A DNA stretch of 64,000 nt from Podarcis liolepis (Eukaryota), in the NCBI GenBank assembly GCA_965112155.1, contig OZ218114.1, one strand, 5' to 3'. The translations under genes were made by a program, and so were the position numbers. The first letter of the stretch is position 1. The number at the start of each line of letters is the position of its first letter. The notes under the pieces are model-generated. The model was not told the origin of the DNA, searched no databases, and was given only the letters and a program-made list of their open reading frames with translations. Below are positions 21,160 to 64,000 of this stretch, in pieces.

Positions 21160-21219
21160 GTTTTCCGGCAGCAGCCTACGGACCAGTAGCAGCGGCAGTG
21201 GCAGCAGCAAGAGGATCAG
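21160..21219 (+). CDS. MSI2: MSI2 coding exon (G)FPAAAYGPVAAAVAAARGS
   Basis: Polypyrimidine tract and CAG acceptor at 21157-21159; donor CAG|GTAGGG; phase 1-1; matches the MSI2 C-terminal region, one Ala shorter than the human sequence I recall. Confidence 0.97.
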
Positions 21220-21276
21220 GTAGGGGGGGCCGTGGAAGAGGCGGCTACATGGCATACCTTCAGAATGCAGGGCCAG
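21220..21276 (+). CDS. MSI2: In-frame extension of the exon through an alternative 5' splice site (GRGGRGRGGYMAYLQNAGP)
   Basis: 57 nt open in frame, ending at a second donor CAG|GTAAAA in the same phase (1); RGG-box peptide. Confidence 0.78.
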
Positions 21277-29910: not shown

Positions 29911-31660
29911 TGTGCCTGAAAAAGTGTCATGGGGAGTTTGCTTTGGCTAACTTCATTGAGGATTGCTGCTTGTTTGAGAATTCTTTAAATGCTTCAGGGA
30001 AACCGTCCATGGATCCCATTCCTCAATCAGCCAATCAACCCTCTTTTTAAAAGGGTTGCAGCAAGGCATTGTCAGCCTGGGTGACACATCAGTAGAGAAA
30101 AATAAATTGCAACACGTGCCATCATTAGGCCCCTGAAGGTTCCCTTAAGTAGGTAGAGTGAGAGAGAGAATTCTAGTAACGCTGGTTTGCCCCTCCCTGT
30201 TATACGACAATTACTTTCCTTCAAGTAATGCTTTCCTGCATTATTTTTCAAAAAGAACTTAAAGCAGAATGACTTCCATTCAGCTTCTGGAGGTGCTCAC
30301 TGGAGGAAAACCCCTACCATTATAGAAGTTGGGTACCTGTGAGCCTGTTCTGGGACATCCACCTGCGCCCCATCCATTTATTTTCTTCGTTCAAGGGCAG
30401 AGCATTCTTTCTTAGTGAAGCGCTAACCCTCCTGTACACTGAGGAGTTCTGTGAATGCTGCGGCCAAGTTCTGACTCTGGCTGCAGTAATTTTACTTGAT
30501 TCTATTGTGGGTAAAATGTATTAGCTTTTAATCACTTATTTTGTAATAGAAAATCCAGGGCACTTGATAAATCATCTCCAGCGCAATTAGTGACCAGCTC
30601 AGGAGAGCAGGCTGAAGTACGGTATAAGTTAATCTGTAATGAATGTAGTCACTAACTTTTAATGGTCTTCTCAATCAGTGGAATTATTTTCAATGGGCAA
30701 ACACTCTTCCACGGAACCCGCTCTGACTTGCAGGGTGCCTCACTTCACTCCTGTGATCCAAACAGACTAATCATGTGTTCAGAGGAAAGGGGGCTCTAAA
30801 AGGTTCTTTCGCTCCATGAATGAATTTTACTCTACTCTTGGCAAGCCCTGAAACAGGCACTTCATGTAACTCAATTTTTCCCTGATGGAACAAAGCTGAA
30901 GAGTGAGGTCTTCTCTTTCTCTTTCCTGCAATCATTATCCATTTTCCATTATAATAGTCCCAGGAGGGCTCTGGCAATCTAAAAGCTATTCAGGCACTTC
31001 TTCAGATATAGGCAGAAGCACAATGATGGAGAGCCAGGGTAGACCAAGTGTTGGATCCATACCTCAAAAGACTTGGGTTCAAATCCCTCAGGACATTGGG
31101 GGATCAACTAAGGTAATGTTTGAACTCATGCAAGTTAAAACTTAGCAGGCCACACTTTATAGATTGGAAACCACTAGGGAACCACAGCACAGCTGCCCTG
31201 AATCTTTCTGAGAGAGTGTCAGATACAAATAACTAGGTTTGTGAGATGGCAAACTGCTGTCTCTCAGTCTCAATTTCCTTAGGCTAAGAATAGGGATGCC
31301 TTACCTCATAGAGATGCTATAATAAAGATGAAGATTGGAAGACTCCTTGCACATCCCAACAGTTTTGCATGCACAGTTATTAGTTTAACATGCCTTTTCT
31401 TTGCAGAACGCAATCCTCTGTGCATAAACGTTGCCCATGTGAATATGAGTGCGAGCTCACCTTTTTCCTGCTATTTTTCATATTAGCTCAGCAATGCAAG
31501 AGCTATATATTAGAGCCACAAATAATCTCCCCTCCACTTCCGATGCAGAGTCATCATTTGTCATTGTTCTGCTTATTTCTTCCAGGACCATTGATAGTTC
31601 CTGGGTCCAAACAATGCCTTCATACATTCAGGTTTTATTTATTGTCCACAGCAAAGAGTA

Positions 31661-32028
31661 AAGGTAAAAGGTAAAGGTACCCCTGCCCGTACGGGCCAGT
31701 CGTGTCCGACTCCAGGGTTGTGCGCCCATCTCACTTAAGAGGCCAGGAGCCAGCGCTGTCCGGAGACACTTCCGGGTCACGTGGCCAGTGTGACAAAGCT
31801 GCTCTGGCGAGCCAGCACCAGCGCAGCACACGGAAACGCTGTTTACCTTCCCGCTATAAAGTGGTACCTATTTACCTACTGCACTTAGGGGTGCTTTTGA
31901 ACTGCTAGGTGGGCAGGAGCTGGGTCCGAAAGACGGGAGCTCACCCCGCCACGGGGATTCGGACCGCCGACCATACGATCGGCAAGTCCTAGGCACTGAG
32001 GTTTTACCCACAGTGCCACCCGCATCCC
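31661..32028 (-). mobile_element. Sauria SINE (Squam1-type), full length
   Basis: (ACCTTT)n tail seen as aaggtaaaaggtaaaggt; BovB-like 3' part (gtcgtgtccgactc); tRNA-like head (cccacagtgccacccgcatccc); TSD AAAGAGTA at 31653-31660 and 32029-32036. Confidence 0.92.
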
Positions 32029-32045
32029 AAAGAGTAGCACCCTAT

Positions 32046-32408
32046 TAAAGGTAAAGGTAAAGGACCCCTGACAGTTAAGTCCAGTTGCGAACGACTCTGG
32101 GGTTTCGGCGCTCATCTCGCTTTACTGGCCAAGGGGGCCAACGTTTGTCCGCAGACAGTTTTTCTGGGTCATGCGGCCAGCATGACTAAGCCGCTTCTGA
32201 CGAAACCAGAGCAGCACACAGAAACGCCTTCCCACCAGAGTGGTACCTATTTATCTACTTGCACTTTGACATGCTTTCGAACTGCTAGGTTGGCAGGAGC
32301 AGAGCCCGAACAATGGGAGCTCACCCCATCGTGGGGATTCGAACTGCCGCCCTTCTGATTGGCAAGCCCTAGGCTCATTGGTTTAGACCACAGCGCCACC
32401 CGCATCCC
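32046..32408 (-). mobile_element. Second Sauria SINE, different subfamily
   Basis: taaaggtaaaggtaaagg tail, shared core ggtacctatttatctacttgcact..ctttcgaactgctaggttggcaggagc, head ccacagcgccacccgcatccc. Confidence 0.9.
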
Positions 32409-39139: not shown

Positions 39140-39730
39140 ACACTTGTCTGTTTTTACTTGTTTACAAGCATTTCTAAACCACTTAATATTTAAAATCTCT
39201 GAACCATGTTGAAAATTGAAAACATAAAAACAGTGAAACTGTATAATAAAAACAGATAAAACCAATTCTAGTAAAAACAGGGTCCAGTCTTATGGGTCAG
39301 GGAAACTCTAGGCAAGAGAAAGTGGCTGAGGCAACGTCTGGCAGAGGAAAGAGCAATCCATAAGGCAGAGGCAACAGTGGAGAACACTTGTTTTTAGCTC
39401 TCACCACCCTATGATATTCTGTAGAGTATGGTGCCACAAGCCATTTCCCTCCAAATTGTCTAAGTGTCCTTACAAGTCTCCATAGCAGCAGTCTTTCAGA
39501 TAACGTGGCTTAGGGTTGTCCAAGTCTTTATATGTTAATAACAAGACTTTGAACATGACACAGACACTAGCTGGCAGCCAGTCCAGGTCCCTCAGCACAG
39601 GTGGAACATGTGTGCGTCCCGGTGCTCCAGTCAACAACCTGGCAGCTGCATTCTGCACTCCCTGCAGCTTCTCCGCCATTCTTGAGGGAAGCCCCACACA
39701 GCGAGCATGTCCTATTGTTGGGTCCTTCCA
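39140..39730 (-). mobile_element. Degenerate L2 LINE 3' portion
   Basis: ORF 39470-39697(-) KLQGVQNAAARLLTG..PVLRDLDWLP..FKVLLLTYK is an L2 ORF2 motif. Confidence 0.85.
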
Positions 39731-41619
39731 GCCTTACAGTTCTGAAGCACGCTTTGGACCCGTTTAGCTCCAACGTTGTACATTGGACCTCTACTAGCAA
39801 CCCAAACTAAGCAACGTCAAAGAACGGCCGCTGGTTTTTGAAGTATAAAAGTAGGAGACGGTAACGGCAGGTTTCCCGTTGGCTTGTATGCCCAGCGCTA
39901 CATGTGCTGAGTGTCGGCGCTCCTTGTTCGACAGCGTCTCCCTGATGTACACATTACTACACGCAGCTTCTGCCTCCACTTTCATCTGTATCGGCAGCAT
40001 TAAATATTATTATATCATTTACTCTCTCGAGCAGGAAAATGATGTTTGGCAGCTTGTTCTATGAATTTTTCATAAAGATAAAAAGCGGCCTAATCTTGTG
40101 AGCTTTAACTCTCAGTAGCAGTAATGGCTTTGATTTAAAGTGTTTTGTCTTAATGATAGTTATATTGAAAATTTCCTGCTGCTTTCAAGCACGCACGGTT
40201 ATTATCATAAACACTGATGGTGCAAACGGCTGCCAAATTGCGTGTGGCTGCTTATGGCAAGAGAGGAGAGAAAAAGAGAGACAGGGAGCTCTGTCGACAG
40301 GTTGCTGTCAGTGAGACCTTTCAATCTGAGAGCATTTTGAGTCTTCCCGAAGTTTTGCTTTGACCTCCAGAAGTGACTTTTGGGGTTCTCGTCACTTCTC
40401 AGCACTGTGGTCCACAGCCAGGCAAGGATAGCAAGATGAAGCAGAATCTCAGGCAGTGTTTGTACAGCTGTTCTCCTGGAAAGCACCCTTAATAAAGGAG
40501 CGTTTACACACGCTGCCATCATTCTGCGCTAAAGTCGGAACACACAGTTGTTAAGTGTCCTCTGGAGGGCCAAGGCCCTCAATAGAGACCAATTATTTAC
40601 ATCCACTTGGGCAGAAATTCCCCATGTTGCACGATCCTGCAGAAAATGGCCTACAAACAGATTTGGGGTCACTTCCCAATGGCTGATGCACTTGGAAAGA
40701 GAAAGAGTTGGAAGCCCAGGGTTTGTCAGTCCTGCAAGGAACACCACACCAAGGGGAATTAGTTGGCATGGAAATTAATTCTGCATGAGTGAGTTCTGCT
40801 TTGAATGTCCTTGTGGGGGAAATCACTTCCCCTCTCATTTTTCTCGGTGTGCACTCTTAAGATGTGTGTTGAGAAACAGAAGAGAGTCAACGTGTATCAT
40901 TCTGTCTAGCTTCTGGGAGATCTGCGATACATGTCTTTGGGACCTAAACAGGTAGCTATCTGACCCTTCACAAGTTACAAAGGCACAAGGCAAGTGTCTG
41001 CTTTGCAGCAGATATTTAAGAGTACTGGTCAAACCTCAAAAAAGAAAGAAACTTAGTAATGCAGGTGCTTTGTGCTACGATCTAATGAGAAAGAAACTAT
41101 CACAAAACTCTGCAAAGATTCATGGAAGTTTGGAGCAGAAAAGTAATTTCCTGAGAGTTATTTATTTTTCCCTGTTCAATTCTTTCCTGAATTCACCATC
41201 TGGAGGCTCTGTTTTCATAATGGGGTGATCTATTTTGGTGATACAGTTGATGCTGAAAGTAAGAAATAAATAAATAAATAAATCTTCCTTTCTGTTTTAT
41301 TTAAGTTCATCTTTTCTGTCTTGCAAGTTCAGACCTGCTCTTGCCTTTTGCTGGAAGGCAATTATGAATGTGGAAGAGCAAAATTCTTCCTGATGCTGGG
41401 GGGGGGGGGTGTTCTTTGTTGTTACCAGTGGCTTACAACACAGATATTAAAATGTACCTCTAGCCCACTTGGCTTGGGAGAATAAATGTGTAGACTGGTT
41501 TGTTAAAATGCATGCAGACATTTTTGCACCAACCAGTTTGAGAATTGCTGTCCTTTAAAGGATGCCCATGATGTGAAATAAGAACAAGCTTAATATCCCA
41601 AATCCCAACCAACTGTGGA

Positions 41620-41860: not shown

Positions 41861-42783
41861 GATTCCCCCTGCTTAGCTAGGTTAAATGTGGAGTAGATCA
41901 ACTCTTTGTGATACCTGCCTATTAATTAATTTTTGTTACTTATGCTAGTTCTCAATCTGAAGGTTGTGACGAGGTTTAATGGAAATCAGCTTCTGTTTAC
42001 TTCCTACTGGGACCCAAACCAACTGAAATCCACAAACTGCCTTATTAAAGCCATAACTTTGTATGGTGTGAGACTCACTCATCTTATCTGGGGCTCTGTG
42101 GAGTTCAATTTTTATGGCCAGGGCATTAACACAAACTCCAAACCTTGCACTATGCAGTACTAAAATGGAGGTGGGGGTGGGAGTGATCTTGTAGGATCCA
42201 GTACAACAGGAAATCCAGGTAAGATCAAATAAGGAACATTTCTCAATAAATACATAGATATACTTTGGTACAAATAGTTATGCACACGCACACACACACA
42301 CTTTGTATACATTGCACCTGGTGGTTGGGGATTTTTTTGCTTTTTATGAGTTTGGGGAAAGGGACTTCATGTGGATGAACCCCTGTAGCTTTGCAAGGTT
42401 AGGCCCAGTCAGCTTGGTTCGGCTTTTCTCTACACTTCTCAGTATGTATTGCATTGGTTGTCATTTTAATCAGTTGGGGTTCTGTGTTTGCATACTTCTG
42501 TTCTTGTGCCTGTTTTGGAAAAGAATATATAGTACATCAGATGGTGAGTTTATGTTTTTTTGTTTTTTTACAAAATCCAGGCTCAATGCCTCTGAACCTA
42601 TGAGTCTGAGTAAGGACGCATGATCAAGCTGTGGTCCACTTGCTCCTCAAAATCCTACATACATATATTTTTGCTCTTGTTTCCGTGATTTGTAACTGTA
42701 AAAAAATAATAATAAAGTACAATTTAATATTGAAAATAAGAACCAATCCAGTATCCACAATGATAGAGTCACTGTATCTCCAG

Positions 42784-42960
42784 GGATCCCCGATTACGGT
42801 TTCTATTCTCCGCCCGGTGACCAACGGGCTCAATTATCGTACGCGGACTATGGTTCCATGGGGCCTCGGGTGGCTCAGATGCTTCGTAGCGAGCACCCTG
42901 CTTCAGCGAGTAACTCCCCCCTTCACCACCTTCCCAGCCCGGATCAATTTAAAAGCCCAG
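42784..42960 (+). CDS. MSI2: MSI2 cassette exon, 177 nt, (G)IPDYGFYSPPGDQRAQLSYADYGSMGPRVAQMLRSEHPASASNSPLHHLPSPDQFKSP
   Basis: Acceptor tgtatctccag|, donor CAG|GTTTGT, length divisible by 3, phase 1-1 like its neighbours, no stop in the MSI2 frame, sharp GC/CpG rise confined to the exon, and Y/G/S/P composition like the Musashi C-terminal region. Confidence 0.85.
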
Positions 42961-44660
42961 GTTTGTATAGAATTTCATTCATTTGGGGAAGCAAAAGAAA
43001 AGGAAAATGGCAATAGCATCACATATTTAGCGATGCACAGAAAGAGATCTGCATGCTATGTATGCCACTTAATGGTTGGCAATCAAACTTCACTCCATCC
43101 TTTTACTCAGTTCTAGAATTTTTGTCGACTTTGCTTCAGTTGTGAAGGGCACAGTTTTCTTTTAGGGGCTGTTCCAGATCTGATCAAATGTCAATCAAAA
43201 CCTTTTGTAGAGGCATGACAGCAGAGAGTGAAGTAGCTCATTAGATGTGCAGGGCAACCTTATTCATGTCTACTTGGAAGTAAGTCTTGAGCTTAAAAAG
43301 TGCATTCCCTCTTCAGATGGGTGTGAATCAAAATGTAACTGTATTCTTTAAAGATTATATAAAGGACCCTAATAATTTGTGTTGATTTTTTCAAGATTCT
43401 TCTTAACCCCAGAGATTTTGATGCAAAAGGTTTCAAACTGCATATTCTGTTGAAAGTTATTCTTAGCTAGGTATTTGACCTGAAAGAGATGCTTAGAATA
43501 AGGTGTGTGCGCTTGTGTATGAATGATACTTCATCCTCCTGAGAATCTTTTACTTTGCTTCTTCCAGAAATTTGCTTCTGACATTTGATGAGCTCTTTCA
43601 TTAGCAATCTGATCCTAAATACCTCTTCAGTGCACCTATCTTACGCTGCATAAGCTTCATGTAGTTTATCATTTCAACTGAACTGGGAACTATTGTTAGA
43701 TTTAACTATGGTTTCTCCAAACAATCCAAGATCAAATTGTGTTTTCTGATCCTGACTTGTTTGGATAAAACCATTGTTGAAATTAAATGAAAATCCTGGT
43801 TTGGATGAAACAATAAACAGTGGTTAGTTGAAAATGCTTTTGATTTGTTCTTTGTGGCTATAACAGGAAGAGAGGGGAGAGCAGACCAAGTCAGGCCACT
43901 AAATTACAACTTAGTGTTATGTCCAAACCTGGTCATTGTTTTCTACAAGGATTCCACAAATGTATCCATGACTTAGATTTTTAGCACACTCTTTCTTGAA
44001 ACAGACAGTCTTCTCAGGGCCCCTTCACACCTGTTTGTGAATCATCACCAAATCCAGATTCGCAAATTCTGCATTCCACCTAGAATGAACTCTCGCAATG
44101 AAACCTTGGTTTACATTATGTGTTGAAAGAGTTCCTACTGGTCTTAATGTTTAAATAAGAGGAGGAATGTCTTGCTGTTGCTCATAGGCATGTGGTGGCT
44201 TCTAAATATATACTTACATAGAGTTCACCACTTGAATGAGTCAGCCATCATCTCTCCCCTCCCCACCTTGGAAAATCCTACGTAACTAGATGGCCTAAAT
44301 ACCTGTACATGGGGTTGATTTTTTGACACTCTTGTAAAATTGCTGAAGTGCTTTTGCCTTGAAAATAGGAAGCCATCATTTCCTCCTCACTTTGTGAATC
44401 CACCTCAGTATAATGCGCCATATGCTAAGGCAGATGTCATAATGAATCATGGCTGGAAATTCCTCCCCATTTTATCAAAGAGAGTTTATCTTTCAGTGGT
44501 GACCTTTCTTGTCCAGAACTGGAGTAATTTGTGTGCAGGCTTTGTGTTAACATGCCAGTTCATAGGACAAAGTGCCTGATAAGCCAGCCTTAGCTCTCAC
44601 TTGTCAGCAGTGCCAGCAAAATCATGCTCTGGGCTCTCGCCACACAAGCACTCCTTAAAG

Positions 44661-44797
44661 CAGCCTTCCCCAACCTGGTGCCCTCCATATGTTTTTGACT
44701 ACAGCTCCCATCAGCCCCAGTCAGCACAGTCATGGGGCCTGCGGCTGATGGGAGCCGTAGTCAAAAACATATGGAGGGCACCAAATTGGGGGAGGTG
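44661..44797. mobile_element. hAT-type palindromic MITE
   Basis: ggtgccctccatatgtttttgactacagctcccatcagcc pairs with ggctgatgggagccgtagtcaaaaacatatggagggcacc; degenerate TSD CCTTAAAG / CTTTAAGA. Confidence 0.8.
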
Positions 44798-45054
44798 CTT
44801 TAAGATTTCACCATTTAAGCTCCTCACCTTGCTTCCAAATCATGCAGTAAGCAGAATAGTAGATTCCCCTTTGTCTCAGGAGAGAAAGTCCTGTTTCCCA
44901 TTTGCATATGTTAATTCATCAAATCATGAATTAAAAATTGGCCAGCATTGAGGCGCACCTAAAACTGTTTTAGATACAATAGTTTAAAATCAGCAAGTAG
45001 GAACACTCAAGCCAGGATCAAAACAAATGGTGGGACTAGTTTGCCTGGTATTTT

Positions 45055-45202
45055 GGATAGCTCAGTTGATTAGAGTTTGGTACTGATAATGCCAAGGTCA
45101 CAGTTTTATCCCCATACAGGAAAGTTGCATATTCCTGCATTGAAGGGGGTTGGACTATATGATCCCCGGAGTCCCTTCCAACTCTACAATTCTGCTATTC
45201 TA
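45055..45202 (+). mobile_element. SINE with tRNA-like head and CR1-derived tail
   Basis: gatagctcagttgattagag..tgataatgccaaggtc head, then ggttggactatatgatcccc..cccttccaactctacaattct..attcta (CR1 3' end). Confidence 0.75.
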
Positions 45203-45959
45203 AGTGAGCATGCAAAAGTGCTTTGAACAGTGAGGGGGCTCTAAGGATCATTGCAGAACAGCCAGAATGTACATGCAGGTAGCCTTTTATGTTTAAAGGT
45301 ATTTAATTGCATTATGTCCTGGTGAGCCATCAGGTAGAATTCTGCCTGTATTCTTTTCATTATATCACCACAATGGCTGATTCAGATATCTGAACAGCCA
45401 AAGTTTGCCCACTTCCTTACTCAGTTGTGTTTTGCTGGTCCGCAACAGCCATCTTCAGTGGAAACCACAGAGGAAGGGTGAGATACCAGAAAAATCAGAA
45501 AGCAGGAAAGATTGGACAAATCAGTTATTCCTTCTTTGGCTTTTGCTGATTGGCTGCAGGCAGAAAGCATGAAGGGAGAAAGCATGCATTAGACATGTTC
45601 CCACAGGAAATAATGGATATGAGCATCTCGTTTTGTGAATACTCGCCAGACAATATATTTTCTGGGAATGAATCCTGTTCGGAAGGCGAGACCTATGTGT
45701 ACATGTTACGTTGCACCTTGTTTTACCGAAGAGATGCTACAGAAATAAAGCTTAAAATCTATAGGTAGGAATGTATAGGTTTAGGGTGCAGAAGTGTGCG
45801 AATTTTTAACACATATATTGAAACAGTTATGTCCCTAATGAAGTTTGGAAATGAAGTCCTCAGAGAAGGAGGATGCTGAATATGAAGGAGATGAGATCCA
45901 AAAGAGAAAAGCAGGAGGGATTTATATTAAATGCCACATTCTGTAGCAAGGACCTTTTT

Positions 45960-46068
45960 AAAAATGTTTTTTAAATGTTTGATGTTATATTATGTTTTTA
46001 TATGTGTTGGAAGCCGCCCAGAGTGGCTAGGGCAACCCAGCCAGACGGGCGGGGTATAAATAATAACA
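45960..46068 (+). mobile_element. L2-type LINE extreme 3' end
   Basis: ggaagccgcccagagtggctagggcaacccagccagacgggcggggtataaataataa. Confidence 0.65.
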
Positions 46069-49000
46069 TTAGTAGTAGCATGAGTCCCCTCCCTCCCCAG
46101 CCAAATTTGATACTGCAGTGAACAGTCCCAATCCACAGCAACATATGGCACCTTCAGTGTGCTGTGGGAAGAGTAACTTTTCATATGTCTCAGTCTTCTT
46201 TCATACCCACCTAACTTCCTCCTGTCTCAGAAGAAAAGAAAAGGAGGGATTAGAACTTGGATTCAATATGTGCCTGGTGAGGAAGAACAGAGTGAGTTTT
46301 CTTGGTGCCGGTGCTTTTCTTCTAGAAAAAAAGGTGTCGGTAGTACTGCGTAGCCTTGAGTACTCCCAGAAAAAAGCGCTTGTCTTGGCATCAGCTCTGC
46401 CTTCTGTACTCCCTTCTCCAAAGCTCTCCCCCACTTGAGCTCTTTTACTTATTTGCCCTTTGGGTGATAATTTCCCCGTTTTTGAAAACCAGGGCTCAGT
46501 GTGTTGTAATGTTGGATAAAGACTGGGGACTCAGGTTCCACTTGCCCCCAACTGAGCCATGGGCCTCACTGGGTGACCTTAGGCCAGTCACCACCTCAGG
46601 CTATGCTGCCTTACAGGGGTAGAAATGAGACAGGATGATAGATGCCACCTGCAGCTCCTTGGAGAAAACACGCGTTACAGATATTTTTATAGAAACATAA
46701 AAATGAGCTTGCAGTAAAAAAGATGGAGCAGGGGTGTCACAGCGTTCCTTTACTGACAGTCTCCTGAGCACCTTTTAGTACTCCCTGAAATAATAGGGTA
46801 GTCACCAGCTCATCCAGAATCATTTCATTCAGCCTGCTGGTTGTTTTGCTAGCTTGCTTAAACAAACCTGTTAAGTGAGTGGTCTCTGTTTTCCCTGCGA
46901 TGTGGAAGGTGGTATCTTAGATTTCTACAAGCTAAATCTCTTGCCATTTCTTAGGGCTACTCTGCCTGCTATTTGTTTTAGGTGCACATCAAAAAATGTA
47001 ATGTGCAAGTGAAGCAAACACGTGTACTATTCAGGTACGGCGACTGGCTGTGGTCTGTAGTTAAAAGCTCACAGTGCCAGACTCAGGTTTGTCTTGGTTT
47101 AATGTGCAAAATGGCCTTAAATGATTCTGGGAATAGTTCTCTCTTTATGGCAGTCCCAATATTTACCAGCCCCGCTCCCAATCTTCTTTTCTCCGGGTGC
47201 AGCAAAAAGCTATCCCTTCAGTTTCTCCCCTTCACTTACATCTTAAAACATTCCATTTCCGCTTTGATCCTCTCGATCCTATTTCCTCCCACCTCTTGTT
47301 TTAAATTATGGTAGCCCAACTGGACAAAATTGGTCATCGGAGACTCGATCAGCGTGATGCTGTTGTTTTCCATTGCTTGGATACATCGCTTTCTCTAATG
47401 TGCCCCCCCCCCAGGGGCTGCGTTTTAGGTTGTAGGGCTTTTCCCCCTAGTTTGCTTTTGAACAATGCATTATTGCTGACTCACACTCATCTTGTTCTCT
47501 CTATTAAGCAGCCGGAGGAACCGAGTCTGCGACGTGAAGTGCGTGATTGCGAGTCCATGTCATTATTTTTAGCTCCTAATTGAATGTGAACTTGCTGGAC
47601 CTCAGTGTGTAATCTAGGTTAATGGGCACACAATGTGGCATTAGAGCTTCCCACACTCATTCCTGTTTGTGGCCCAGTTCCGTTTTCTGAAGGGGAAGGT
47701 GGGAAACAGACTTTTACTACTTTATTAGTTTCTCACCAGAGACTCATTTGGGAGCTGCAGGCTGGCGTTGACAGGAAGGTTAGATCCACTGTCCAATAAA
47801 CCTGGAGATTACAGCTGCTTTTACCACTATATTCCCCCTCCCATTGCAGTCATCAACCTGCATGACCCCAATTTAAAAAGAGCCCAAAATAGTAATCCAT
47901 CACTTTTTGTTTGTGCATTTTTGTTTTTACTTGTTTCAAAAATATTGCTTTGCCCTGTACTTCATAAAACTTCATGACCGCGAAATGGAATTGACTTATT
48001 CCATAGCTTTTCAGTGCAGAGATCATGTTTTCATCTCAAGTTGAATGGCAAGGATTTTACCGCTCAAATTGCTCATTTGCACAAGATACTGGGCAACCTG
48101 AAAATTAAGAGGATGAAGAGAAAACATTGTGCAATCACCATCCATCTGTAGAAGAGTATTCCTTTTTATTCTTTCCTGCCTCCCACCCCAGAACTGCTCA
48201 CTACAGCATCTTCTGCCCAGCATTGAAAATAGAACCCATAAACTAAACTCATAAGGGTCAACTTTAGGGATGGAATTTTCTGAAAATCACAGTGTTGATT
48301 ATCAACACACTTTTTTTTTCCTCATTCCAGCCTCAGTCCTGAAGGGAAGCAACTTATTTTTTACTGGTTCTGCTTAAACTACAGATAATTGCCACATATT
48401 ATATGCATAATTATAGGTATAATATTAAACACATATTACATATGAATACATTCCAGGTTTCCCAAGATAACAGATGCATACAACAAGGCATGAATTTAAA
48501 AAAATGTATCTAGTTTTATATGTTTCATATTTATAAAATCACACTAGCAAAGCATCAGCTTGCTTTTCCATCCTCCCTCCCGTTCCTTTTAACTCATGTG
48601 ATGCCTTTTTTCAGATTGCGAGATGCTTTTTGTAAGCTGCTCAGAGCCTTTTTGGTTAAAGGACTGAATATAAATACAAAATATATAAATGCTGTGTAAA
48701 TGAATAATGCAGTGGCAAGAGGAAACCAATCCCTGGCTCCAGACCTGGGGAGCCAACACCAGATCTAAGGCCAGTCTGGCAAGGGTGTCCTCCTCAGGCA
48801 GAGAGTTGTTTGGAGATCCCCCAGACAGTGTTAGTGAAGACAAAGTACAAAAAGAAGTCTTTGCCCACCACTCAGGGGAAAAAGAGGTGTCTGTTTAAAG
48901 AAACATTGTCTTCTCACTCCAAGACTAGCTCTCCCTTCAAGTTGCACACCTAGAGACCCCAAGCCCAGATAGCCACAGCCCTCAAAACATCAACCCAAGC

Positions 49001-50693
49001 CTGGACCCTGACATCTGGCAAGAATCTTCCAGGGGTAGAAGCAGTGTGAGAAGGCTGCACACTGGAATTCCAAGTGATCCCAAGGGACAGGTTTGTGCAG
49101 ATCCAGTCCTCAAAGAACCCCACCAGACACCCAAAGACCCCAGGCAGTCAGCCTCTTCAGATCAAGGCCATTGCACCCGTTTCTCACAGGGATTCTCTTT
49201 CGCATCTCTCTTTGTGCTGCTGCCTCCCCCCTCGGCCTGGTTTCAAAACTCCTTAATTTTATTTTCAGTGTTCTTCTGAACAAAACAGCAGCAGGTTCCC
49301 ACTTTTTGTTGTCCAGTCTAAATAAGAAAGTTTGAGCTAAAAAATTACACCCTGCAAGTTATACATTCTCTCTGGCACTTCAAATAGGTTTTTAAGCTTT
49401 TAGATTTGGCATGTTCTCTGATTTTCCCATCACCTCCCATGCTTATTTAAGATTTGTTTCTGAAATACATTATCAGATGACTACTCCCTTCCTTTTTGAT
49501 ACTTCACGTCTAACTTGCAGTATTTTTTAAGTCTTACAAGGATGCTTGTATTGGAAAAGTATATTACAGCAATATATTCTGATTAAAAGCCAGTCTCTGC
49601 AAGGTGCTTTTTCTCTGTGGCAGTTCCAAGACCTGTCTTCTCTAATGTGTTGGGTCTACTGCAGACTGCCAGCTCTGTAACAGCTTTTCCAAATGCTCCT
49701 CTGAAGTTTTTGCAACTCGCTGTTTTGTAGGTCATGAACACAAAAGGAGCCGAGACATCTTCTACTCCTCTAGTGTATTTGCAAGATAATGTCCCAGTGG
49801 GCGTGCTTTTTATGCTTTGCATTTCTCCTGTAGTCAATTCTGCGATCACAGCGAACTATCAAAATGATGTTCAAACAATGGGAAATTACCCTTGACTTTG
49901 TATAGTCAACAGTCTTTGTTCAGACTTCACAAGCAAATCCTGAATGTACAAACAGTATCATTCATATGTGTGTGTGTTTAACAACTGTGAAAAGATACAT
50001 TTCAATATGTTCTGGTGAATTCAGTTGGTTGGTTGCAAGGCTACTTGGAGGGGGCAAGTGTCCCTGAAGGTGTAGGGGCACTGCGGGGGCTTGCTCCTGT
50101 TCCCTAAGTTCCTGCAGTCTAAAACAATTAGGCCCAAAATTGTTGGGCAGAACACTGAGAAAAAGTCCCCAACCTCTGGAATCTGATAAGTTTGCTCACA
50201 CTTTCTTGCAAATTGTCCGTTTTGCAGTTGTTGTTCCCATTAAGAAGGACATTTCCCCCTATCGATATCTTCCAGAATTCCCCTGGCAGAGTGAGCTTAC
50301 TTGGCTCTTTCCACTAGCACAGCAGAGACCAGTTAAATGCTCTCCCTAGGTAGGAGTGCAGGCAGTGGATGTCATTTTGGAGAAGGAAAAAATACTGCTC
50401 CAAGCAACTTGGCCTTGTGTGCAGTTGTACATCTCTACTGGTGTTCAATCAGTTGAGGCTAAACTGTTGACATGGCCCTGTGGGCTTGGTGCACTGTATT
50501 CAGGCTCACCCTGGGGATGGGTGGGTGATGCAACACCCCCTTTCCCCTGAGTAGTGTTGAACGTTTGACTGATCAGAGAAGATTTGGTTAACTGTCACAC
50601 AACAGTCAATAATTTTTAAAGCATTAACTTTTATGATGACAACAAAAGCAATAATCATTAGATCACTGTTATAGGGAAACAAGGCTGATATTT

Positions 50694-50723
50694 ATTACTA
50701 CTACTACTACTATTATTATTATT
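50694..50723. repeat. Compound (TAC)n(TAT)n microsatellite
   Basis: tactactactactactattattattatta. Confidence 0.9.
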
Positions 50724-51056
50724 AAAATCTAATTTTGTTAGGATACCTGGCAAGGCATCTATAAATGCAAACAGTTCACAGGTCCTAAAATCTTTTGGTC
50801 CCAGGCAGGATTCCTATGAACTTTAGGAAGCTTCTGAGAGTGGAAACAGAGATCTCATTTTTGGATTCCCCCTTCCTGCTGTGGAAACTCTGGCGGCCTT
50901 TGCACTACCAATATGGCAGCCCAGACATCAATAGGGCTGAGAAGGTCTGTAGACCTGGGGAAGGCTTGGATCTAAAGCCTTCCCAGTCCTCTGACACACC
51001 CCAAACTGAAGATTAAATCCAAACAATGGAAACAATGCTAGGGAAATAATTTAAAT

Positions 51057-51536
51057 TAGAGGTTTTCAAGCTCTGATTTTGAGGTTTTGAATCCATGGCT
51101 CCCTTAACCGACTACATTCTTTCTGTGGCACCCCTGTTGGGCTGAGGAACCCAGTTATGTCACCCCCTGACTGCAGAGTTGGCAGCCTCTCATCCTTTTG
51201 TGAACACCCTTGTGGAGGGTTCCCTCAGCCTCCTCTCCTCTCCCCTCTCTACTTGGGAGTCCTCTGAGCAGCTGCTGCTGCTGCTGCCGCCCCCGGTCTC
51301 TGAGCCACCCCCCACACCAAAGAGAGGGGCCTCCAAGAGGCACCATTCACCTGCAGAGTTTATAGTCAGGGCTGCTGCAATAAACAGTTGTGCAAGCCTT
51401 TGGGAGGCAGAGACTTGAGAGGGCATCAGAGGAGGGAGGGAAGGAAAGAGGGATGGAGGCCTGTGTTGTCCGTGGCACCTCTAACCATCACTCAAGGCAC
51501 CCCAGGGAGCCACAGCACCCTGGCTGAAAATCACTG
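51057..51536. mobile_element. hAT-type non-autonomous DNA transposon
   Basis: Ends tagaggttttcaa / gctgaaaatcactg; 8-bp TSD ATTTAAAT / ATTTAAAC; subterminal ggcacccc repeats. Confidence 0.7.
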
Positions 51537-52569
51537 ATTTAAACAAATGTTTAAAACCCTAGCCAAGGACATAGGCGAGCAAGAGTGAACCTGCACCCTC
51601 ATTCCTTCCCTGCTGGCAAGAGCCCAACAGGTTGTTGGATGAGGTATATAAGCTGCCTTTGGCCCCCACCACCTTCCCCTCCCCAGTTTTAAGATTTCAG
51701 CCTTGGTATTCTATTTGGATTGTATCCTAGAACTGGAGGGTGGGCCTTCAGTTGCAAAACCGCATGAAAATGAAAACAGAAAGAAAGCAAAGTACAGTAC
51801 AGTTAAAAAGCCAAAGCTCCCTTTTTAAATGCAGTAGTGCTAGGTAAGCAGTGTTCCCTCCAACAGCAGCTGCTTTCTTCTTTTCCTCCACCATCATCAT
51901 TATGGAATCTTAACCACTATAGGGAAAGGGAGTAAGAAGCCCTTCTTCCTATCGTTGCTAAGAAAGGAAGCATCATAAAATAAATCAGGCATTCCTGGAA
52001 TATTTATTCAAGCAGTTGAGACAAAAACAGTCCTTGAAACCTCCTACTTCGCAATACGTTTACAGTATTGGACCACCATTAAAGAATAGGTGGTCAGGCT
52101 GTCAAATCTGACAGATCAGTTGACTGGTGTGTCAATCCTCCCTCAGCGCTTTGGGCCCCCACAGACAGGTTTACTTATACCTGAGTGGAGATGGAGGGGC
52201 TTGTCTTTTATCTATTGAGAATGCTGTCTGTATATTAGCTTTGCATCCGTTTTTCAGAAATGCACTCATTTTGGTATCTAGCCATGAATCCTGAGCCAGC
52301 AGGAAACACACACAAAAAGGAGCAATGGAGATAACCGTGGGCAACCAGGAACACAGTCAGAAGAGGTCAGGGAGCCATCTTGCTCAAGGCAGAACCATCT
52401 CTTCCATCAGTTGCCTCTTCCCAAACACATGGCAGCTCCTTTGGTGCACAATCCTGAGACAACTAAAAATTATTATATCCCTTCAAGTTCCCTGCGCTTC
52501 TTTGTAAACACATTGAAATAAGGAGACCCCTTTGCTATCTGGGCAGCTCCCCAGCAATGACCTCTATAT

Positions 52570-52880
52570 CAGAGGCGGATTTAGTTCAGTGTGAGCATTG
52601 CAGCCACACAAGGCATGCAAGCCAAGGAGGGCGCCTTTTCAAAGCCAGGCAAGCGCTTGGCCGGCTTCAGGAAGGAGGTAGGAGGGCTCTGGCAGGGTCC
52701 TAGGGTCCTCCTTCCCAAAGCCAGGCAAGCGCTTACTGGGCTTTGGGAAGGTAGGAGCACTCTGGGACCTTGCCAGAGCCCTCGTTACCTCCTTTCCCAA
52801 GCCCAGCATAAGTCGGCACCGCGAAGGCTGTAAGGAAGGCGTCCACTGGCCTCGCACAGGGCGTCCTATTACCAAGGCCT
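52570..52880. repeat. Dispersed repeat related to 19100-19370, with a duplicated internal hairpin unit
   Basis: caaagccaggcaagcgctt occurs twice; ctttgggaagg / cttcccaaag inverted arms. Confidence 0.6.
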
Positions 52881-54627
52881 GCCCATGTCTGCATGGTGGC
52901 CATTTTGAGCTTCCCTTGGATGCACCCATCCTGCCAGGACTCCTCACCTTACCAGGACAGCCACCTCTGGCTCACACTAAGGCAGCCTCCATCTGGCGTG
53001 ATTTAAAGCCACTTCCATGTGGAGGCTCTGCATCACTCACTTCAGAAGCCTAAGCATTTATTTGCCTGGGTAAGGGAGGCTTTCTGGTGAGCTGTCAGCA
53101 AGGCCTGTATCCACTTTACTGAACTGGAAAAGAAAAGTCTGCTCTAGCAAGTTAATAAAGGGCCTCTGAATATCTCAGCTGGATGTTTTTCTCCATGAGT
53201 GAGAACGCCAAATGTTAGCTTGACATTTAATCTTTAATATTTTTTTAAGTACGTTGTTTTGCCATTTCAGTCCAGCACAATGCAGTTACTTTCCTAGATC
53301 TTTCTCCCCAACCTCAGTGCTGATTGTGGTCACCTGTCCCCCTGCCAAACACTAGGGATACTGCTTCATGCATTCTCTCCATGCACACAGACCCCATTTT
53401 ATCTCTGCCAGGTTAATACTTATAATATTTTGCTATGGGAGGGGCTGCACATTTACAGCTGGCCTTTATTTTAGGACTTTGCAGATCTGTGTTGCTCAAG
53501 ATGTACCAGATTTGTTTTTCAATTTATCTATTTTTTTAAGTATGGGTGTTCGTTAGAGGTGGAAAGATTCCCTTTTGGTGTGTGAGGCTTTGGGGAAAGC
53601 CCCTCTTTTCCAGGAAATGTTGTGGAGTTTTCTGTAAGTAGACAAACAGCTGTTTTCCTCAAAAGTGTGGAATCTAGCAAGATGCAGAAAGAAAACTAAT
53701 GTGAAATGCCCAGGGGCATATTACTCCCAGATAGTTTTTTTCTCCCAGCTTGGGAAAGGGGAGGCAGGATTCCCAACTATACCTCCAGGCAACATGGCAT
53801 TTTGACCTCTGGGGAAACTTACAAGCTTGCATCTTTGGTGGGCTGAAAGATTCAAAGCTATGGTAAAGGCTTTGCAACCTCCCATTTCACTCTGCCTAGA
53901 TGTATAGAGGGAACGGTGCTCTGTAGTCTGTTGTCAGAGAGGGCAGGCCCTGTGTCTTTTTGCTATTTAATCCTGTTTCTTTCTCTTTTTTTCTTTAAAA
54001 GCATTTTTCAGATACTTCCACCAATTATTTTACATATCAAACATCTCTAGACAATGCAAATAGACCAATAACAGCAAAGGTTTATTTAATAACAGCGTTC
54101 CTGGAACATCATTTTCTAGGTTTGCATTATAGTCGGAGCTATTTGAGAGCATCTTGTTCAGTATAATTAAGCAATAGATTTTAAAAGGTCAATAATGATC
54201 AGCTCAAGAAATAGCACTGCTTGCCTTGATATAGTCATGAAGGCAAGTGGATGGTCTCAAAGCATAAAGCTGGCAGTTTTCTCTCTTTGTAGCATACTAC
54301 TTATGGTTCGGTCTTCCTCCTCCACTAAATCTGCTAATTTCACTTTTTCTACCAAATAGTTGACAAAAAGAGATGCATCGTGCTTTCAGCTAAAGGAGCT
54401 GACTTCCCTATTACTATTTACATTTTTTTCCTCCCTACTTCCCTCTCTGGAAATAATTAAGATTATAGGATTGTTTCTGCTTCTAGCTACTCATTTCTTT
54501 GTGCATTCCGGTAGTGCCCAAATAATAGTTTTGGAGATGGAGACAGACACTTATTATTAGGGGAGGAGGAAAGGGAAACCAACCCTCCTCTGGTACCGAA
54601 AACACCCCAAATGTTCCATTGCATATC

Positions 54628-54670
54628 ATTTGTTTGTTTGTTTGTTTGTTTGTTTGTTTGTTTGTTTGTT
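54628..54670. repeat. (TTTG)n microsatellite
   Basis: About 10 TTTG units. Confidence 0.95.
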
Positions 54671-55251
54671 TTAAAGAAAAGCATTTCAAACCTCCCAATC
54701 TTCATGTACCTTGAGAGCTAAAAAGTGGGTGGGTGGACAGGACATATATTTCATCTGAAAGTTTTCAGTGGATCCAAAAAACGGTTTTCTTTCTTTGCTT
54801 ATCAACATTTAATATCAATATTAACACAATGTGTAGTCTAAAACTAGTTCCTTTGTAGTTTGCATGGGATGTGAATGCTGTCTCGACGTGCCCAGATCTA
54901 GAAAACTCGTTTTACTACTGCATGAGCATCAAATCAGATGTTGAAAAATATATATTTTTGTGATAATTTGGTGAAACTGAGCACCTACCGTCTCTGGTTG
55001 CAGTAGTGTGTTGAATGGTGTTTTTTTTTTCCTTCTCTCTTTATACATATTTCTATATATTTGGAGCTCCAAGCTTCTTAGTAGTATGGGCTGACTATTA
55101 TTGAGTACTTGCTCTCCTATCGCATGGCCTTGGTTAAGTGTTAGAAGTTGGACCTAGGCTGTTTTCTTTTCTTTTTTTAGTGTTTGGCTTTGTAATAACT
55201 GTGCATGCTCGGCTTCTGGCCTCATACCCAGCTTTATTCTCTGCACACCAG

Positions 55252-55460
55252 TCTTGAATAGCTACAGTGCTCAACCGAATTTTGGCGCACCCGCTTCCCC
55301 GGCAGGCTCCAACCCAGCCCGGCCCGGAGGATTCCCAGGGGCGAACAGCCCGGGTCCCGTTGCAGACCTCTACGGTACAGCCAGTCAAGACTCCGGTGTT
55401 GGTAACTACATAAGTGCTGCCAGCCCCCAGCCTGGCTCCGGCTTTGGGCATGGAATTGCT
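55252..55460 (+). CDS. MSI2: MSI2 coding exon with two acceptors (55252 long, 55306 short)
   Basis: (V)[17 protein letters not shown]|[52 protein letters not shown]; CAG acceptors at 55249-55251 and 55303-55305 (54 nt apart); donor GCT|GTAAGT. Confidence 0.97.
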
Positions 55461-63635: not shown

Positions 63636-64000
63636 AGTATATCTGGATGTCCAGGCAAGACAGGGCGAAGTTTCTGAATGGTTCCATGTTTAGGTGATAC
63701 ATCATCAATCAGACTTTGAGCATTGCATCATCACCAATAACCCACACAAACTGGAGGTGGCATTCAGCGGACTTGGGTTGTCCACAATCTCTATCATCTC
63801 ACAAACCTGCTGTACTATATAGAACAACAGCTTTTTAAAGAAAAGAATATGTGTATATATATATAATCCATTTTGTTCATTTTATTATTTTTCTTGATGT
63901 TTTTCCCCCTTTGAAATCTATTTTAATCACTCTTTTGTAGTATTTTGACATAGGCTTGTAGTCACGTAGACCTACTACTTTGTGTATTTAGAAAAAGCCT
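63636..64000 (+). other. MSI2: MSI2 non-coding terminal exon (start of the long 3'UTR; runs off the window)
   Basis: Long pyrimidine tract and TAG acceptor at 63633-63635; agtatatctggatgtccaggcaagacagggcgaagtttctga closely matches the human MSI2 3'UTR start as I recall it. Confidence 0.85.

What the first reader, a model, noticed from the sequence alone, without database searches (positions are those of the whole stretch)
42784..42960. Hidden 59-codon MSI2 cassette exon absent from the canonical mammalian protein
Seen: deep in the intron is a CpG-rich 177-nt block with AG/GT ends, phase 1-1 and open in the MSI2 frame. It encodes a Tyr/Gly/Ser/Pro low-complexity peptide with DYG twice and four Ser-Pro motifs (YSPP, NSPL, PSPD, KSP). 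The ORF track misses it because that frame has no long start-initiated ORF. Known: the human/mouse MSI2 proteins I recall go straight from ARGS to (VLNSY..)GSNPAR, and Musashi activity is controlled by proline-directed phosphorylation of its C-terminus. Inference: this is an ancestral or non-mammalian module that adds kinase sites and aromatic 'stickers' to the disordered region. I vaguely recall similar text in predicted fish msi2 isoforms but cannot verify that.
Basis: partly seen in the sequence, partly recalled or inferred. Interest (0 to 1): 0.85.

Follow-up and report, generated by a model that had tools for sequence, protein, structure and literature searches.

The report
Known, ancient MSI2 alternative exon
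The 177-base block is a real, expressed coding exon of the lizard Musashi-2 gene. It is already in the predicted MSI2 proteins of lizards, snakes, turtles, amphibians and fishes, so it is an ordinary annotated feature and not a hidden one.

Summary
Window 42784-42960 (+) is 177 nt, has AG/GT ends, is open in phase 1-1, and encodes the 58-residue peptide IPDYGFY...SPDQFKSP. It has 13 CpG, against about 2 per 177 nt on average in the window.

It is a genuine MSI2 exon:
- **Splicing:** an RNA-like run of the same organism has a contig that joins the upstream donor (21219) to 42784. Exon depth there is about 89, against 8-10 in the flanking introns. A DNA run is flat across the stretch.
- **Lizard annotation:** the peptide is 58/58 identical to RefSeq MSI2 isoforms of Podarcis muralis, Lacerta agilis and Zootoca vivipara.
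- **Wider annotation:** it is also present in snakes, Varanus, turtles, frogs, salamanders, a caecilian, lungfish, bichir, sturgeon, teleosts, chimaera, sharks and rays. The residue numbering of the Xenopus Msi2 cDNA used in published work implies that it carries the exon.

No mammal or bird protein with the exon turned up. That is a statement about annotation only.

The exon is therefore not hidden or new. Only two of the four Ser-Pro motifs are conserved, while the aromatic residues are nearly invariant. Its function is untested; the likely role is an insert of short motifs in the disordered C-terminal region. Novelty: already known. Interest: low.

The parts
42784..42960 (+). MSI2 alternative coding exon, 177 nt, phase 1-1. 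It encodes G|IPDYGFY...SPDQFKSP|(G/V).
   Evidence: Sequence and translation. Contig at 42781-42960 with depth 89 against 8-10 in the introns, in RNA-like run X1. 58/58 identity to lacertid RefSeq MSI2 isoforms.
42764..42783 (+). 3' splice site region (tagagtcactgtatctccAG) with only a moderate pyrimidine tract.
   Evidence: In run X1 the contig graph branches at 42781, where the intron path and the junction path merge.
42961..42966 (+). 5' splice site GTTTGT, a moderate match to GTRAGT.
   Evidence: The exon contig of X1 ends exactly at 42960, and the intron contig starts 30 nt before that. The DNA run X15 spans the site without a break.
21160..21219 (+). Upstream MSI2 exon (G)FPAAAYGPVAAAVAAARGS, whose donor at 21219 is joined to 42784.
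   Evidence: The 26 loose letters of the X1 junction contig map uniquely to 21191-21216, directly before CAG at 21217-19.
21220..21276 (+). Alternative-donor extension GRGGRGRGGYMAYLQNAGP(G). It precedes the exon in several annotated isoforms.
   Evidence: The identical segment sits directly before the exon in P0195-P0199.
55252..55460 (+). Downstream MSI2 exon with two acceptors, 55252 (VLNSY...) and 55306 (GSNPAR...). It holds the ANSPGP and ASPQPG Ser-Pro sites that match the published regulatory serines.
   Evidence: RefSeq isoforms join the exon to either acceptor. Regulatory serines: PMC5599597.
42961..43016 (+). Read-through tail GLYRISFIWGSKRKGKWQ*, produced if the donor is not used.
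   Evidence: ORF 42858-43016. Lacerta agilis isoform X14 (P0195) ends ...KSPGLYRISFIWGSKRKEKWQ.

Best explanation
Window 42784-42960 is a genuine protein-coding exon of the Musashi-2 (MSI2) gene of a lacertid-type lizard, and it is alternatively used. It is spliced between the ...AAARGS exon (donor 21219 or 21276) and the next exon (acceptor 55252 or 55306). It inserts 59 residues into the disordered C-terminal region, just upstream of the 18-residue VLNSY segment and the two regulatory Ser-Pro sites. The exon dates to the common ancestor of jawed vertebrates and is routinely annotated outside mammals and birds. Shown here: the splice sites, the frame, the upstream junction in RNA-like data, and orthologous peptides in annotated MSI2 isoforms. 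Inferred: the insert works as a set of short linear motifs (PDYGFY, S-[FY]-ADY, QML-x-SEH, NSP, SPDQFK) that change partner binding, localisation or condensation of MSI2, possibly tuned by phosphorylation at the two conserved Ser-Pro sites.
For: Splice sites and frame are as described. In run X1 a 56-nt contig (depth 66) joins window 21191-21219 to 42784-42810. The exon contig has depth 89, against 8-10 in the introns, and ends exactly at 42960. DNA run X15 is flat at 14.7 and unbroken. A HMMER search of 1.84 billion representatives gave 39 hits, 31 below 1e-10; 38 carry the exon peptide, inside MSI2-like sequence or as genomic reading-frame fragments (the weakest, P0038, is an unrelated repeat). 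Eel isoform X1 has the identical exon order, and X14 lacks the exon, which shows alternative use. There are 215 fish hits and 118 hits among tetrapods, lungfish, non-teleost ray-finned fishes (bichir, sturgeon) and cartilaginous fishes, which include 11 squamate species. The peptide is 58/58 identical to Podarcis, Lacerta and Zootoca isoforms. Across 75 distinct exon peptides, 21 positions are at least 95% conserved. The Xenopus Msi2 numbering S356/S381 against human S278/S303 equals +59 +18 +1. The whole C-terminal region, exon included, has pLDDT below 50.
Against: The downstream junction (42960 to 55252 or 55306) was not seen directly. It rests on the contig break at 42960 and on RefSeq models. 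Run X1 is only guessed to be RNA, and two raw RNA-seq runs gave no reads at all, which is no test. Exon skipping was not shown in the lizard itself. No codon-level selection test could be run. The functional part is pure inference.
Confidence: 0.9

Rival explanations
1. In lizards the exon is the default, mostly constitutive form, not a rarely included cassette. The short mammal-like protein would then be the minor isoform.
For: In run X1 the 21219->42784 junction contig has depth 66 and the exon body 89, which is high for an MSI2 exon relative to intron signal. The isoform clusters carrying the exon are large, for example 133 members for P0198. The cloned Xenopus cDNA contains it.
Against: No skipping junction could be counted, so no inclusion level is known. 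Eel has isoforms with and without the exon. The 3' and 5' splice sites are only moderate.
Confidence: 0.3
2. It is a conserved non-coding element, such as an enhancer or ultraconserved element, that happens to be open in the MSI2 frame. Gene predictors would then have included it wrongly.
For: Many small runs from other organisms hold 73-80% of its 31-mers, as capture data sets for conserved elements would. Open AG..GT blocks are common by chance.
Against: An exon-exon junction contig exists. Conservation follows amino acids over about 450 million years. Substitutions are conservative and every length change seen preserves the frame, while both boundaries stay fixed. The exon sits in a cloned Xenopus cDNA by numbering.
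Confidence: 0.02
3. It is a splicing-noise or regulatory (unproductive) exon with no protein function.
For: It lies deep in a 34-kb intron, and its splice sites are moderate.
Against: It preserves the frame and has no stop. 21 of its 58 positions are at least 95% conserved across jawed vertebrates. Its depth is about nine times the intron depth.
Confidence: 0.03

Closest known systems
RefSeq predicted MSI2 isoforms of lacertid lizards: Podarcis muralis X2/X5 (P0198, P0197), Lacerta agilis X5/X14 (P0196, P0195), Zootoca vivipara X3 (P0199)
   Same: The exon peptide is identical (58/58). So are the preceding GRGGRGRGGYMAYLQNAGPG segment and the two downstream acceptor choices.
   Different: Nothing in the exon differs. 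The window's read-through tail differs from the L. agilis X14 tail by one residue (G against E).
Xenopus Msi2 (xrp1 cDNA; Good, Rebbert and Dawid 1993), used in PMC5599597
   Same: The regulatory serines are numbered S356/S381 against S278/S303 in human. That offset equals this exon (59) plus the VLNSY segment (18) plus one extra Xenopus residue. X. laevis isoform X2 (P0184) carries the exon, 52/58 identical to the lizard's.
   Different: Presence in the cloned cDNA is inferred from arithmetic.
Teleost msi2a/msi2b and eel MSI2 isoform X1 (P0041, 425 aa)
   Same: The exon order is the same...AAARGS + GRG extension + this exon + VLNSY segment + GPNPPRPGG... There are 215 fish hits.
   Different: Identity is about 70%. 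Eel also uses an internal donor after AQMLH that keeps only the first half of the exon (P0039, P0044).
Human MSI2-324 18-residue segment from the alternative 3' acceptor of exon 12 (PMC13228403)
   Same: It is another small, alternatively spliced insert in the same disordered region, directly next to this exon (window 55252-55305). In human cells it switches localisation and translational activity.
   Different: It is a different sequence and a different splicing mechanism (alternative acceptor, not a separate exon). No functional data exist for the 59-residue exon.
Human MSI2 variant 2, with alternative exon 11b (PMC5599597)
   Same: It is also an alternative exon taken from intron sequence in the C-terminal part of the gene.
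   Different: Exon 11b truncates the protein and removes the regulatory serines. The lizard exon is in frame and keeps them.

Membership tests
Coding exon of MSI2 | Lies inside the MSI2 gene, on the same strand, between known MSI2 exons | tested here: met
   The flanking exons ...AAARGS (21160-21219) and VLNSY/GSNPAR (55252/55306-55460) were read directly.
Coding exon of MSI2 | Canonical AG/GT splice sites and a frame compatible with both neighbouring exons | tested here: met
   It is phase 1-1, and the boundary codons become G, then G or V.
Coding exon of MSI2 | Joined to the upstream exon in RNA | tested here: met
   A contig in run X1 carries window 21191-21219 followed by 42784-42810. The DNA run X15 shows no such join. 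Caveat: X1 is RNA only by inference, from its contig total of 98 Mb and the exon/intron depth contrast.
Coding exon of MSI2 | Joined to the downstream exon in RNA | tested here: inconclusive
   The X1 exon contig stops exactly at 42960 with a graph branch, and X15 does not branch. The junction itself lies outside the stretch laid, and only one call was allowed. RefSeq isoforms show both downstream joins.
Coding exon of MSI2 | Orthologous peptide at the same position in MSI2 proteins of other species | tested here: met
   272 proteins fetched here contain it, from chimaera and sharks to squamates.
Coding exon of MSI2 | Codon-level purifying selection (dN/dS below 1) | not testable with these tools
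Only protein-level conservation was measured.
Cassette (skippable) exon | Isoforms with and without the exon in the same species | tested here: inconclusive
   Met in eel: X1 has it and X14 lacks it. Not tested in the lizard itself.
Proline-directed phospho-regulatory module of Musashi | Conserved Ser/Thr-Pro sites | tested here: inconclusive
   S44-P45 is conserved at 85% (shifted by one residue in cartilaginous fishes). S51 is at 88% and P52 at 99%. The other two sites are not conserved. The known regulatory serines lie in the next exon.
Proline-directed phospho-regulatory module of Musashi | Demonstrated phosphorylation with a functional effect | not testable with these tools
   This needs experiments.

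The most novel reading that the evidence does not exclude
The exon is an ancestral jawed-vertebrate module of MSI2 that was lost or silenced independently in mammals and in birds, while turtles, squamates, amphibians and fishes kept it almost unchanged. Its invariant motifs (PDYGFY, S-[FY]-ADY, SPDQFK) would bind a specific partner or set localisation, so that MSI2 regulation differs in a systematic way between these lineages.
Probability: 0.3. Interest if true: 0.35.

Novelty: already known. Interest (0 to 1): 0.12.

Why it matters
It matters little as a discovery, because the exon is already in public annotation for the same lizard family and for most non-mammalian vertebrates. Two points have modest value. 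First, almost all functional work on the MSI2 C-terminus uses the mammalian protein without this insert, whereas the Xenopus protein used in oocyte assays carries it. Differences seen between frog and mouse Msi2 in those assays could partly come from this exon. Second, its apparent absence from mammalian and avian annotation, if it also holds at the genome level, would be a clean case of lineage-specific loss of a conserved disordered-region module.

Tried and rejected
- **Orthologous DNA:** I therefore had no orthologous DNA, no dN/dS and no comparison of exon against intron conservation.
- **Raw RNA-seq runs:** X24 and X21 gave 0 reads on the stretch. This is no test, not evidence of silence.
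- **Family and fold:** Pfam finds no family in the exon peptide. AlphaFold2 on a 16-sequence alignment gives pLDDT below 50 for the whole C-terminal region. The helix drawn at residues 322-336 of P0198 has low confidence and is not used as evidence.
- **Papers:** the zebrafish msi2b splice-variant paper (PMC3901373) and the 1993 Xenopus xrp1 paper (PMC309235) are not held. PMC11986153 had nothing on this region.
- **Joined model:** The exon was searched alone by reference.
- **Rejected readings:** a chance ORF, because conservation and the junction rule it out; a hidden or unannotated exon, because of the 58/58 match to RefSeq; and a four-site kinase module, because only two Ser-Pro sites are conserved.

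Full report
**Observation.** Window 42784-42960 (+) is 177 nt. It is preceded by ...tatctccAG and followed by GTttgt. In the frame set by the MSI2 exon that ends at 21219 (phase 1) it has no stop. It encodes IPDYGFYSPPGDQRAQLSYADYGSMGPRVAQMLRSEHPASASNSPLHHLPSPDQFKSP, and the boundary codons become Gly, then Gly or Val.

- ...GFPAAAYGPVAAAVAAARGS ends at 21219, with an alternative donor at 21276.
- The two acceptors are at 55252 (VLNSY...) and 55306 (GSNPAR...).

An open frame with AG/GT ends is not informative alone. The same intron holds 142 open, phase-compatible AG..GT blocks of 177-300 nt. Composition does set the block apart. It has 13 CpG (observed/expected 0.91, GC 58%), against 0.12-0.27 in the flanks. 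Only 0.14% of 177-nt windows in the 64 kb reach that count.

**Is it spliced?** One reads call was allowed, and I laid four runs on 42400-43350.
- Run X15 has 1.26 Gb of contigs, so it is genomic DNA. It covers the stretch in one piece at a flat depth of 14.7.
- Run X1 is from the same organism and has 98 Mb of contigs, so it looks like a transcriptome. Its intron contigs have depth 8-10. A separate 180-nt contig of depth 89 covers exactly 42781-42960.
- A 56-nt contig of depth 66 in X1 has its last 30 letters on 42781-42810. Its first 26 letters are AGCGGCAGTGGCAGCAGCAAGAGGAT.
- That string occurs once in the window, at 21191-21216, directly before the CAG that ends the upstream exon at 21219.

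This contig is the 21219->42784 exon-exon junction. Contig overlaps of 30 nt at both exon ends (k-1 for 31-mers, on my assumption that Logan builds its contigs with k=31) show graph branches at 42781 and 42960 in X1 that are absent from the DNA run. That is the signature of splicing at both boundaries. The downstream junction itself lies outside the stretch, so it was not seen. Two raw RNA-seq runs gave no reads at all and are no test.

**Is it conserved and annotated?**
- A HMMER search of the exon peptide against 1.84 billion representative proteins gave 39 hits, 31 of them below 1e-10.
- The sequences and source names show the exon inside MSI2 of Ascaphus truei, a shark (Mustelus), and several teleosts and eels.
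- Eel isoform X1 (425 aa) has exactly the predicted order...AAARGS, GRG extension, this exon, VLNSY segment, GPNPPRPGG... Isoform X14 lacks the exon, so it is alternative there.
- A search with the eel exon gave 215 hits. The 120 hits listed are all teleost msi2, msi2a or msi2b proteins.
- Two searches with frog exons gave amphibian, turtle and squamate isoforms. The squamates are Podarcis muralis, Lacerta agilis, Zootoca vivipara, Pogona, Euleptes, Thamnophis, Erythrolamprus, Varanus, Elgaria, Salvator and Hemicordylus.
- The same searches also returned a caecilian, lungfish, bichir, sturgeon, chimaera, sharks and rays.

The window's peptide is 58/58 identical to the Podarcis, Lacerta and Zootoca isoforms. 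Those isoforms also carry the window's GRGGRGRGGYMAYLQNAGPG extension and join the exon to either downstream acceptor. The window therefore comes from a lacertid or a close relative, and the exon is part of routine RefSeq annotation of that family.

**Literature.** PMC5599597 numbers the regulatory serines of the Xenopus Msi2 cDNA S356 and S381, equivalent to human S278 and S303. X. laevis isoform X2 (P0184) has the exon but not the VLNSY segment, and has these serines at 338 and 363. Adding the 18-residue segment gives 356 and 381. So the cloned frog cDNA used in oocyte assays must contain this exon. This is an inference from arithmetic, since the 1993 paper is not held. For human MSI2, PMC13228403 describes exon 12 with its two acceptors following directly, with no intervening exon mentioned.

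**Mammals and birds.** None of the 118 hits is mammalian or avian. That search covered lengths of 197-628 aa, and its word index would catch PDYGFY, ADYGS and SPDQFK. None of the 39 representatives looks mammalian or avian either. This supports 'not annotated there'. It does not show that the sequence is absent from those genomes, which I could not search.

**What the peptide looks like.** 75 distinct exon peptides were aligned.
- At least 95% conserved: D3, Y4, G5, F6, Y7, P10, D12, R14, S18, A20, D21, Y22, G26, Q31, L33, E36, H37, S40, H48, P52, D53 and K56.
- Position 19 is always F or Y. F55 is 93% conserved.
- Ser-Pro is conserved at 44-45 (85%, shifted by one residue in cartilaginous fishes). 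At 51-52, S is 88% and P 99% conserved.
- The lizard's YSPP is Y-[ST]-x-P elsewhere, and KSP is KNP in 40% of the sequences.

Pfam has no family for the peptide. AlphaFold2 leaves the whole C-terminal region below pLDDT 50. The most likely reading is a block of short linear motifs inserted into the disordered region that mediates MSI2 protein contacts and localisation. The insert lies next to an 18-residue segment known to redirect the human protein to the nucleus, and upstream of the two regulatory serines. This functional part is inference only.

**Verdict.** It is already known from annotation, and by numbering from a cloned frog cDNA, so the 'hidden exon' claim fails.

**Limits.**

Noticed in passing
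window 21220-21276: The alternative-donor extension GRGGRGRGGYMAYLQNAGP(G) is present, letter for letter, in the lacertid RefSeq isoforms. Related forms (GRGARGRGGYMAYPQN.G.G) occur in sharks, chimaera, bichir, lungfish and teleosts. It too is annotated and ancient.
   Followed up: partly
window 63636-63698: An alternative terminal exon is read in two frames. After ...GFGHGIA (exon ending 55460, phase 0) it gives SISGCPGKTGRSF*, the C-terminus of Podarcis isoform X2. Joined directly to the 59-residue exon (phase 1) it would give EYIWMSRQDRAKFLNGSMFR*, which matches the tails of frog X2/X7 and eel X12 isoforms at 70-81% identity.
   Followed up: partly
window 42961-43016: Read-through of the exon's donor gives GLYRISFIWGSKRKGKWQ*. 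Lacerta agilis isoform X14 (P0195) is annotated with this ending, differing by one residue.
   Followed up: partly
window 31633-32282 and 39702-40041: These are the only other places in the window with 13 or more CpG per 177 nt. Their nature (CpG island, repeat or further exon) was not examined.
   Followed up: no
P0039, P0044 (Anguilla rostrata isoforms X5, X8): Eel uses an internal donor after ...AQMLH that keeps only the first 36 or so residues of the exon.
   Followed up: no
P0280, P0281 (Hemicordylus capensis): This lizard's exon is unusually divergent. It reads ISEYRFY instead of IPDYGFY and is 6 residues shorter, with most of the otherwise conserved PRVAQMLRS stretch missing (GLRNEH in place of GPRVAQMLRSEH), which suggests relaxed constraint or a model error.
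   Followed up: no
P0223, P0252, P0262 (cartilaginous fishes); P0188, P0190 (salamanders): Further small inserts sit between this exon and the VLNSY segment: GSAPG(L/I)NSHLL(T/S)WPQPLVKMTGKQ in chimaera, sharks and rays (the skate has LSSQ for LNSH), and GS(S/C)LIPSSILCTP in salamanders. No counterpart was found in the window by tblastn.
   Followed up: partly
runs X5-X14 (organisms B-G, seven studies): Small contig sets from six other organisms hold 73-80% of the exon's sampled 31-mers. That implies only one or two base differences over 177 nt.
   Followed up: no
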